Shown here: piece by piece, positions 22,760-22,925 of the stretch | Layout: each line of letters starts with the position of its first letter | Position numbering within the stretch: position 1 is the stretch's first letter | Assembly (NCBI GenBank): GCA_963924565.1 | Contig: OZ004607.1 | Location: 4,650,001 to 4,714,000 of the forward strand | From: Ascidiella aspersa | Taxonomy: Eukaryota | Direction of reading: 5' to 3' | DNA: 64,000 bases | Position numbers and translations under genes: made by a program | Notes under the pieces: generated by a model | Databases searched by the model: none | The model's input: only the letters and a program-made list of their open reading frames with translations | What the model was told of the DNA's origin: nothing

Positions 22760-22925
22760 TGTTAATTGAGTACACATGTACGGATCTGTAATGTAGCTTT
22801 ATAATGAAATGCAAAGGCGAAAAAGTCGAGTAGATCGACATCATCTTGATTAAGACGTTTCGATACGAACTTGCATCATCTTCAGTTAATGTGACTGATA
22901 TGTAAATCAAATACAATTGAGTCCC
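22760..22925 (-). mobile_element. Short HHR-bearing Penelope-like repeat, copy 2
   Basis: The reverse complement aligns with 8643-8765 and 45147-45249 (gtatcgaaacgtcttWatcaagatgatgtcgatctactcgac...tttgcaWttcattat). Confidence 0.75.
22849..22890 (-). ncRNA. Minimal type I hammerhead ribozyme motif (Penelope-like element/retrozyme type)
   Basis: The minus strand reads ATTAA-CTGAAGA-T-GATGC-AAGTTC-GTATC-GAAA-C-GTC-TTAAT. It has the CUGANGA/GAAA/GUC core, a 5-bp stem I, a 5-bp stem II and palindromic ACGU in place of stem III. Confidence 0.75.

What the first reader, a model, noticed from the sequence alone, without database searches (positions are those of the whole stretch)
22849..22890. Intact minimal hammerhead ribozyme in a dispersed short retroelement upstream of Tbx2/3
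Seen: the minus strand reads ATTAA CUGAAGA U GAUGC(AAGUUC)GUAUC GAAA C GUC^ UUAAU. All catalytic core bases are present, and stem I (AUUAA/UUAAU) and stem II both pair. Predicted cleavage is between 22854 and 22853. Known: Penelope-like elements and animal retrozymes carry minimal type I hammerheads whose helix III is reduced to a palindrome and that act as dimers. Here the palindrome is ACGU with no loop, so a monomer cannot fold. Inference: this is a probably unannotated non-autonomous PLE/retrozyme family whose RNA would self-cleave only as a dimer.
Basis: partly seen in the sequence, partly recalled or inferred. Interest (0 to 1): 0.85.

Follow-up and report, generated by a model that had tools for sequence, protein, structure and literature searches.

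The report
Penelope retroelement relic with minimal hammerhead
The hammerhead ribozyme motif is real, but it sits in a dead, front-truncated copy of an ordinary Penelope-like retrotransposon, a class known since 2014 to carry exactly this dimer-type minimal hammerhead, so it is a good annotation rather than a discovery.

Summary
The minus strand 22890-22849 reads as a complete minimal type I hammerhead. It has helix I of 5 bp, the core CUGAAGA, one unpaired U, helix II of 5 bp, GAAA, the ACGU palindrome and C17. Predicted cleavage is between 22854 and 22853.

The motif is Penelope-like element (PLE) type, but the carrier is not a non-autonomous or retrozyme family. It is the 3' UTR plus tail of an RT + GIY-YIG PLE family, which I call F-A. 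Longer copies run without a break from the endonuclease reading frame into the same hammerhead. 5' ends form a continuum. 3' ends fall at two sites about 30 nt apart, which is the PLE "tail". Inverted 5'-truncated partner arms and 10-14 bp target-site duplications are common. Direct tandems are essentially absent.

At least four other PLE families in this genome carry the same architecture with different, still-pairing helices. An ACGU-type pattern hits 3,116 times genome-wide against 3 for a reversed control.

All defining features of metazoan PLE min-HHRs (Cervera & de la Peña 2014) are met. The window copy (22766-22976) lies antisense, about 9 kb upstream of the Tbx2/3-like gene, and is most likely inert. 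Other first-stage notes of this scan record similar elements elsewhere in this genome.

The parts
22886..22890 (-). Helix I, 5' strand (AUUAA)
   Evidence: 5 contiguous Watson-Crick pairs with 22853-22849. The commonest subfamily has ACUAA, which gives an A x C mismatch and only 3 contiguous pairs.
22879..22885 (-). Catalytic core box C3-A9 (CUGAAGA)
   Evidence: Every position matches the majority base in at least 97% of sampled family copies.
22878..22878 (-). Unpaired U between A9 and G10.1
   Evidence: an unpaired U or A at this place in all five PLE families examined. PMC4209133 lists it as a conserved trait of PLE min-HHRs.
22862..22877 (-). Helix II hairpin GAUGC(AAGUUC)GUAUC, including G10.1-C11.1
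   Evidence: the hairpin forms in the minimum-free-energy fold. The family majority is GAUAC/GUAUC, and the window copy has an A-to-G change that keeps a G.U pair.
22855..22861 (-). GAAA box overlapping the ACGU palindrome (A15.1 C15.2 G16.2 U16.1), with no loop
   Evidence: a 4-nt self-complementary helix III that can only pair between two motifs.
22854..22854 (-). C17; predicted cleavage 3' of this base (between 22854 and 22853)
   Evidence: Derived from core numbering on the sequence read. Cleavage was not tested.
22849..22853 (-). Helix I, 3' strand (UUAAU)
22766..22911 (-). Direct arm: a 5'-truncated copy of the 3' UTR of PLE family F-A, hammerhead included
   Evidence: 88% identical to positions 316-462 of the L028 reference piece (GIY-YIG end to tail).
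22766..22796 (-). 31-nt PLE 'tail' at the 3' end of the direct arm
   Evidence: family 3' ends fall in two classes, tailed (34 arms) and tail-less (19 arms ending about 25-34 nt earlier, plus 5 cut further in). The tail is described as a PLE-specific signature in PMC11167929.
22913..22976 (+). Inverted partner arm. It covers the 3' UTR up to CUGAA of the core, is truncated on its outer side, and forms a long hairpin with the head of the direct arm.
   Evidence: 81% identical to reference positions 285-346 in reverse orientation. No target-site duplication was found for this copy.
8675..8760 (+). Second F-A copy in the window. The core reads CGGAUGA (U4 changed to G) and there is no tail, so the hammerhead is not intact.
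45063..45261 (+). Third F-A insertion: inverted arm plus direct tailed arm, between 12-bp target-site duplications (45063-45074 and 45250-45261). Neither arm keeps an intact hammerhead.

Best explanation
The motif is the minimal, dimer-type hammerhead that Penelope-like retrotransposons (PLEs) carry in their terminal region. The roughly 210-bp element at 22766-22976 is one dead-on-arrival, 5'-truncated insertion of a PLE family (F-A) whose longer copies encode RT and a C-terminal GIY-YIG endonuclease.

In that family the hammerhead lies about 85 nt after the stop codon and about 110 nt before the 3' end. The insertion anatomy is what the PLE integration mechanism produces, with both target strands primed on the element RNA and two alternative RT start sites. 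That anatomy is a direct arm with a roughly 30-nt tail, an inverted tail-less arm and a 10-14 bp target duplication.

Shown here: the motif, the family, the link to the RT/EN reading frame, the PLE end signatures, and the same ribozyme architecture with covarying helices in other PLE families of this genome.

Inferred from the literature, not shown here: in source elements two motifs pair through ACGU to build a 4-bp helix III and cut 3' of C17, processing multi-copy element transcripts. The lone window copy has no same-strand partner nearby, is antisense to the neighbouring T-box gene, and most likely does nothing.
For: Motif and chance. establish the motif and its rarity by chance.

Family and ORF link.
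- The repeat has 2,324 first-look candidates.
- In L028 the same strand reads a GIY-YIG C-terminus (YIGQT...), a stop, the 3' UTR, the hammerhead and the tail.
- That 84-aa piece has many genomic matches at 75-98% identity.
- Longer copies reach the RT region. One has a 309-aa open frame. L074 aligns to residues 359-863 of a related intact 880-aa ORF at 52% identity.
- The 880-aa ORF has RVT_1 and GIY-YIG above Pfam cut-offs.

End signatures.
- 5' starts form a continuum from inside the ORF to reference position 408.
- 3' ends are bimodal, 34 tailed and 19 ending about 25-34 nt earlier.
- Target duplications of 10-14 bp flank whole composites.

Same architecture in other PLE families, downstream of their ORFs, with different helices.
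- GGCAA/UUGCC + ACGU + U.
- GCAC/GUGC + AGCU + U.
- GCC/GGC + AUGCAU + A.
- GCCA/UGGC + AUAU(AU).
- All have the unpaired nucleotide after A9 and G10.1-C11.1.

Genome-wide. The pattern CTGANGANG-N(7-20)-CGAAACGTH gives 3,116 hits against 3 for the reversed control, with many distinct pairing helix II types.

Literature. PMC4209133 defines exactly this min-HHR, notes opposite-strand pairs 100-700 bp apart, and says most motifs sit in truncated PLEs. PMC11167929 describes the tail and the cleavage and extension of both strands.
Against: No RNA evidence was obtained.

No full-length intact F-A copy was seen among the scored copies, so 'autonomous-type' rests on broken or truncated copies and on related intact families.

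Within the family the hammerhead is not clearly better kept than its neighbourhood. The exact 32-mer counts are 435 for the hammerhead and 449 for the adjacent 32-mer. Only a sample of 33 copies shows fewer rare variants in the hammerhead (1.3% against 3.0%, p = 5e-4), and those copies are not independent.

The commonest subfamily has only 3 contiguous helix I pairs. Helix III would be just 4 bp. Published PLE min-HHRs cleave poorly in vitro (PMC4209133), and cleavage was dispensable for insertion in vitro (PMC11167929).
Confidence: 0.82

Rival explanations
1. One reading: a distinct non-autonomous PLE-derived or retrozyme-like family that is transcribed, self-cleaves as a dimer and spreads using a PLE's enzymes.
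For: Most copies are short (composites of 195-727 bp) and non-coding. One locus (L010) has two same-strand copies 360 bp apart. A second same-strand pair 362 bp apart appears in the list (C2:22689338 and 22689700). A 2026 preprint argues that animal retrozymes derive from PLE pLTRs (10.64898/2026.07.22.740005).
Against: 5' ends are a continuum running into the GIY-YIG/RT frame. The insertions examined share no internal junction. The spacer in the L010 tandem is a 100% identical copy of sequence 2.67 kb upstream. Its junction with the tail is unique among the 40 of 425 first-look candidates that were scored. Close pairs in the list are otherwise on opposite strands. The hammerhead is minimal, not the canonical type I of retrozymes (PMC7229834).
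Confidence: 0.07
2. The motif is a genuine conserved PLE feature, but in animals it does not work by self-cleavage. It might instead be a structural or recognition element for the RT/EN or for RNA dimerisation, and the hammerhead resemblance would be ancestral baggage.
For: PMC4209133 reports very low in vitro activity even as dimers. PMC11167929 found cleavage unnecessary for insertion in vitro and found no RNA-seq reads ending at the site. Here helix III is only 4 bp and helix I is 3-5 bp.
Against: All catalytic-core positions stay invariant across five divergent PLE families while the helices covary. The reversed control is nearly empty. A mere dimerisation or binding element would not need the full core. 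PLEs of plants, fungi and protists carry efficient hammerheads (PMC4209133).
Confidence: 0.2
3. A foldback or MITE-type DNA transposon whose terminal inverted repeats happen to contain a hammerhead-like string.
For: Many loci are near-palindromes with two outward-facing arms and flanking duplications. Rfam's only weak hits are hairpin (miRNA precursor) models.
Against: The arms are asymmetric, with one tailed and one tail-less. The inner junctions vary. Many insertions have a single arm (L004, L007, L013, L015, L022, L024, L025). Arms continue into an RT/EN frame.
Confidence: 0.02
4. Chance resemblance to a hammerhead.
For: The motif is short, and Rfam does not call it.
Against: Only 0.01 matches are expected per window. 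Genome-wide there are 3,116 hits against 3 for the control. Helices covary across families.
Confidence: 0.01

Closest known systems
Minimal hammerheads (min-HHRs) of metazoan Penelope-like elements (Cervera & de la Peña 2014, PMC4209133; dimer cleavage by Lünse, Weinberg & Breaker 2016, as cited in PMC6765202)
   Same: Type I topology. No helix III hairpin, only A15.1-N-N-U16.1 with palindromic 15.2/16.2. An unpaired nucleotide between A9 and G10.1. A G10.1-C11.1 pair. Short helix I (3-5 bp). Located in the terminal repeat region next to an RT-EN ORF. Thousands of mostly solitary motifs in truncated copies. Frequent opposite-strand pairs 100-700 bp apart. Several covarying families per genome.
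   Different: Nothing of kind. Helix II here is 5 bp, against 7-8 bp reported for the main Schistosoma families, and N7 is A. Other families in this genome do have 6-7 bp helix II.
Animal non-LTR retrozymes (Cervera & de la Peña 2020, PMC7229834)
   Same: Type I hammerhead in a short, AT-rich, non-coding repeat. Thought to be mobilised by PLE enzymes. Dimer-dependent folding in some vertebrate examples.
   Different: Retrozymes are head-to-tail arrays of 170-400 bp units. They carry canonical hammerheads with loop 1-loop 2 contacts and give abundant circular RNAs. Here copies are dispersed, truncated at random 5' points, continuous with an ORF, and carry the minimal variant.
PLE insertion signature: optional 30-40 bp tail and extension of both strands (PMC11167929)
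   Same: Two discrete 3' termini about 30 nt apart. Inverted arms facing outward. Target duplications flanking the whole composite.
   Different: The in vitro work was on a lizard Poseidon element whose hammerhead overlaps the ORF start. In F-A the only hammerhead seen lies in the 3' UTR, and the element's 5' end was not recovered.
Double-hammerhead of newt satellite 2 and avocado sunblotch viroid (Forster et al. 1988, as cited in PMC4209133 and PMC6765202)
   Same: An unstable helix III that becomes a stable helix only when two motifs pair.
   Different: Those have a 2-3 bp helix III with a small loop and sit in tandem or rolling-circle multimers. Here there is no loop at all, and a tandem partner is usually missing.
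Schistosoma Sm-alpha / Sj-alpha SINE-like elements with hammerheads (as cited in PMC6765202)
   Same: A dispersed short retroelement bearing a type I hammerhead.
   Different: Sm-alpha is a discrete tRNA-derived SINE-like unit with a canonical, monomer-active hammerhead. F-A copies are truncated PLE ends with a minimal motif.

Membership tests
Metazoan PLE min-HHR | Complete catalytic boxes CUGANGA and GAAA, with U16.1 and H17 | tested here: met
   CUGAAGA, GAAA, U, C17.
Metazoan PLE min-HHR | No helix III hairpin; positions 15.2-16.2 palindromic, so that two motifs build helix III | tested here: met
   ACGU with no loop. The same or analogous palindromes (ACGU, AGCU, AUGCAU, AUAU) occur in four other PLE families.
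Metazoan PLE min-HHR | Unpaired nucleotide between A9 and G10.1, and a G10.1-C11.1 pair | tested here: met
   U at 22878, with G (22877) pairing C (22862).
Metazoan PLE min-HHR | Families with covariation and compensatory changes within one genome | tested here: met
   five families; many helix II types among 3,116 hits. Within family F-A alone the changes look neutral.
Metazoan PLE min-HHR | Core-dependent self-cleavage as a dimer | not testable with these tools
   The nearest-neighbour model cannot score the intermolecular double hammerhead, which is formally a pseudoknot.
Penelope-like element (EN+ type) | Single ORF with RT followed by a C-terminal GIY-YIG endonuclease | tested here: met
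   F-A copies carry the GIY-YIG C-terminus directly upstream of the hammerhead. They align to RT-EN ORFs of related families. RVT_1 and GIY-YIG are above cut-off in the related 880-aa ORF. Caveat: all F-A copies seen are truncated or broken, and Pfam does not call the F-A fragment itself.
Penelope-like element (EN+ type) | Optional 30-40 bp 3' tail, meaning two alternative 3' termini | tested here: met
   34 arms end at reference 450-462 and 19 end at 428-438.
Penelope-like element (EN+ type) | Inverted 5'-truncated partner copy and a target-site duplication around the composite | tested here: met
   The window copy has the inverted arm, but no duplication was found for it.
Penelope-like element (EN+ type) | Partial tandem (pLTR-ORF-pLTR) organisation of full-length copies | tested here: inconclusive
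   No full-length F-A copy was recovered. Related families do occur as tandem arrays, with 2,671-bp spacing on C9 and 3,422-bp spacing on C2.
Animal non-LTR retrozyme | Head-to-tail arrays of 170-400 bp non-coding units | tested here: not met
   close pairs are on opposite strands. The single examined direct pair is a one-off.
Animal non-LTR retrozyme | Canonical type I hammerhead with helix III and loop 1-loop 2 contacts | tested here: not met
   no helix III hairpin and an open helix I. There are no Rfam hammerhead hits.
Animal non-LTR retrozyme | Expression as small circular RNAs | not tested

The most novel reading that the evidence does not exclude
Dispersed, solitary or outward-facing F-A hammerheads might not be inert. 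Transcripts from different loci could dimerise in trans through the ACGU palindrome and cut one another, so that thousands of PLE relics act as a conditional RNA-processing network. In this reading the copy 9 kb upstream of Tbx2/3 would trim an antisense or enhancer-associated transcript. A weaker alternative is that some 3'-UTR-only copies have become a self-propagating mini-PLE lineage.
Probability: 0.05. Interest if true: 0.6.

Novelty: new member of a known kind. Interest (0 to 1): 0.22.

Why it matters
As an annotation it is useful. It explains a repeat with thousands of copies, about 3,100 ACGU-type minimal hammerheads and several PLE families in a 308-Mb animal genome. It also shows that the PLE end signatures (tail, inverted arm, target duplication) can be read directly from raw sequence. 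Because several divergent families sit side by side, this genome would be a convenient place to test the open question of whether animal PLE hammerheads cleave in vivo. It does not reveal a new kind of ribozyme, element or regulation, and the copy near Tbx2/3 has no evident role.

Tried and rejected
1. Rfam at gathering and at E<=10 gave no hammerhead family. It gave only weak hairpin or miRNA-like hits caused by the inverted arm. This is uninformative, because the Rfam models need a helix III hairpin.

Expression, cleavage ends and circles are therefore untested.

The comparison rests on five families plus the hit list.

4. MAFFT alignment of the six hammerheads mis-registered the core. I parsed the helices by script instead, and the count of structure pairs was not run.

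5. Energy of the double hammerhead could not be evaluated. It is formally a pseudoknot, and the cofold minimum is an extended duplex.

6. The first strict scan of the GIY-YIG loci for an F-A-like sequence or motif found nothing. A relaxed finder then found the other families' motifs.

7. Tandem or retrozyme reading. The 225-nt spacer in L010 belongs to a different low-copy repeat. Its junction with the tail is unique among the scored matches. It is an identical copy of sequence 2.67 kb upstream. I rejected it as a recurrent unit.

8. Target-site duplication for the window copy: none of 8 nt or more was found.

Copies are only described.

Full report
**Observation.**
- Helix I 5' strand AUUAA.
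- Core CUGAAGA.
- One unpaired U.
- Helix II GAUGC/GUAUC closing the loop AAGUUC.
- GAAA, then CGU, then C17.
- Helix I 3' strand UUAAU.

Cleavage 3' of C17 would fall between 22854 and 22853. A loose pattern for the two core boxes occurs once in the window, against 0.01 expected from shuffles. Rfam reports no hammerhead even at E<=10. That is expected, because A15.1-C-G-U16.1 leaves no room for the helix III hairpin that those models require. The minimum-free-energy fold of the isolated stretch forms helix II but not helix I.

**The carrier is a dispersed family.** A 301-nt query around the motif gave 2,324 first-look candidates in the 308.6-Mb assembly, with scored copies 81-94% identical. 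The window holds two more copies, at 8675-8760 and at 45063-45261.

An alignment of 44 copies from 30 loci shows two things:
- Many loci hold two arms head to head, with their 3' ends pointing outward.
- One arm ends about 30 nt further out than the other.

Target-site duplications of mostly 10-14 bp flank the whole composite. Composites range from 195 to 727 bp and their inner junctions all differ.

**It is the 3' end of an RT/EN element, not a self-contained short element.** In L028 the direct arm continues upstream into an open frame. That frame reads a GIY-YIG endonuclease C-terminus (YIGQT..., a Cys/His cluster, then a stop). The hammerhead core starts about 85 nt after the stop codon, and the 3' end lies about 110 nt beyond the cleavage site.

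- That 84-aa piece has many genomic matches at 75-98% identity. There are further groups at about 61% and about 43% identity, some inside open frames of 843-880 aa.
- Longer F-A copies reach the RT region. One has a 309-aa open frame ending in the same 3' UTR. Another aligns to residues 359-863 of a related intact 880-aa ORF at 52% identity.
- The 880-aa ORF scores above the Pfam cut-offs for RVT_1 and GIY-YIG.
- The F-A frame aligns to the GIY-YIG block of a third family that has both domains.

Across 58 arms, the 5' starts run as a continuum from inside the ORF to well past the hammerhead. The 3' ends are bimodal: 34 arms are tailed and 19 end about 25-34 nt earlier, with 5 cut further in. 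All F-A copies I scored are 5'-truncated or carry stops. I saw no intact full-length copy and built no consensus.

**Comparison with what is known about PLEs.** PMC11167929 describes the optional 30-40 bp "tail" as a signature shared by and unique to PLEs. It traces the tail to two RT start sites, and it shows the enzyme cleaving and extending both target strands. That would yield exactly these outward-facing arms, one tailed and one not.

PMC4209133 defined the metazoan PLE "min-HHR". Its traits are:
- no helix III or loop 3, only the conserved nucleotides;
- palindromic 15.2-16.2;
- a conserved extra nucleotide between 9 and 10.1;
- a conserved G10.1-C11.1 pair;
- a short helix I;
- thousands of mostly solitary motifs in truncated PLEs;
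- pairs 100-700 bp apart on opposite strands;
- several covarying families per genome;
- low in vitro activity, and only as dimers.

Every structural item on that list is met here.

**Evidence that the motif is constrained.**

*Between families the evidence is strong.* Downstream of the ORFs of four other PLE families in this genome, the same layout recurs with an invariant core and different helices:

| Helix II | Helix III palindrome | Base at 17 |
|---|---|---|
| GGCAA/UUGCC | ACGU | U |
| GCAC/GUGC | AGCU | U |
| GCC/GGC | AUGCAU | A |
| GCCA/UGGC | AUAU(AU) | A (or U) |

Genome-wide, an ACGU-type descriptor hits 3,116 times, against 3 for the same pattern read backwards. The listed hits include at least half a dozen distinct helix II sequences of 5-7 bp that still pair.

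*Within F-A the evidence is weak.*
- 45 of 54 sampled copies keep the core, the palindrome and at least 4 helix II pairs, but the family is young.
- Seven of the eight single-copy helix II changes break a pair.
- The exact hammerhead 32-mer occurs 435 times and the adjacent 32-mer 449 times.
- A sample of 33 copies shows fewer rare variants in the hammerhead than in the flanks (1.3% against 3.0%, p = 5e-4). Those copies are related and were picked by similarity, so I give this little weight.

This is the pattern expected if selection acts on source elements and inserted copies decay neutrally.

**Retrozyme reading.** Animal retrozymes are head-to-tail arrays of 170-400 bp units with canonical type I hammerheads, expressed as circles (PMC7229834). 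F-A does not fit. Close pairs are on opposite strands. The one direct pair I could inspect (L010, 360 bp apart) is separated by a 216-nt stretch that is 100% identical to sequence 2.67 kb upstream. Its junction with the tail is unique among the scored matches. That makes it a one-off capture, not a propagating unit. A second same-strand pair 362 bp apart, in the list, could not be fetched.

**The window copy.**
- The direct arm is 22911-22766 (minus strand, 88% identical to the reference, 31-nt tail at 22796-22766).
- The inverted arm is 22913-22976. It covers the 3' UTR up to CUGAA and is cut on its outer side. No target duplication was found.
- Its hammerhead is intact, with a G.U in helix II and the 5-bp helix I variant.
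- It has no same-strand partner in the window. The other two copies have a U4-to-G core or lack the 5' half.
- It is antisense to, and about 9 kb upstream of, the first T-box exon of a TBX3-like gene.
- The inverted arm would sequester helix I and CUGA in a long hairpin.

I therefore regard this copy as an inert relic.

**Mechanism, and how sure I am.**
- Identity as a truncated PLE end with a PLE min-HHR: about 0.8-0.85.
- That the motif self-cleaves as a dimer in source-element transcripts is inferred from the literature and from core conservation, not shown here.
- About 0.2 remains for a non-cleaving role, given the poor in vitro activity and the negative RNA-seq result reported for a lizard PLE (PMC4209133, PMC11167929).
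- RNA data could not be consulted.

**Novelty.** The kind has been in the literature since 2014. At most this is a new family member in a genome where it may be unannotated. Other first-stage notes of this scan record similar hammerhead and Penelope elements elsewhere in this genome. They did not change my reading.

Noticed in passing
L010:921-1647 (G000:C7:17964794-17965520) and L076:1501-1716: One F-A insertion (727 bp, with a 12-bp target duplication) contains a 216-nt stretch between two direct arms. That stretch is 100% identical to native sequence 2.67 kb upstream. It looks like a template switch or local capture during integration.
   Followed up: partly
G000:C9:23488156-23494142 and G000:C2:30628752-30640503: Related PLE families stand in head-to-tail arrays. 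Three copies with 816-aa open frames are spaced 2,671 bp apart. At least four GIY-YIG hits are spaced 3,422 bp apart. This is the classic tandem PLE layout, described only.
   Followed up: no
L032 (G000:C11:2088-5303); possibly also L031 (C35): The small contig C11 encodes a bacterial-type UvrC (GIY-YIG plus UvrC RNase H domains) next to an ATP-synthase-like NTPase ORF. It is probably a bacterial contaminant or symbiont contig in the assembly.
   Followed up: partly
window 16618-17321 (+): A fragment matching eukaryotic LSU rRNA, model positions 24-664, far from any rDNA context. Another first-stage note calls it a captured 28S piece inside a MITE.
   Followed up: no
window 44099-44272: Four tandem copies of a roughly 43-nt unit end right at the start of the main T-box exon match (44268-44543).
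   Followed up: no
window 1487-1592 and 58233-58337: A repeat of about 105 nt (81-89% complementary) lies in inverted orientation 56.7 kb apart, bracketing the T-box gene.
   Followed up: no
G000:C6:23028668-23056778: A dense cluster of many T-box domain hits on both strands within about 28 kb suggests a tandem T-box gene expansion.
   Followed up: no
window 8675-8760: In this F-A copy a helix I can still be drawn, but its 5' strand comes from a tiny inverted piece at the junction, and the core reads CGGAUGA (U4 to G). It is not an intact hammerhead.
   Followed up: partly
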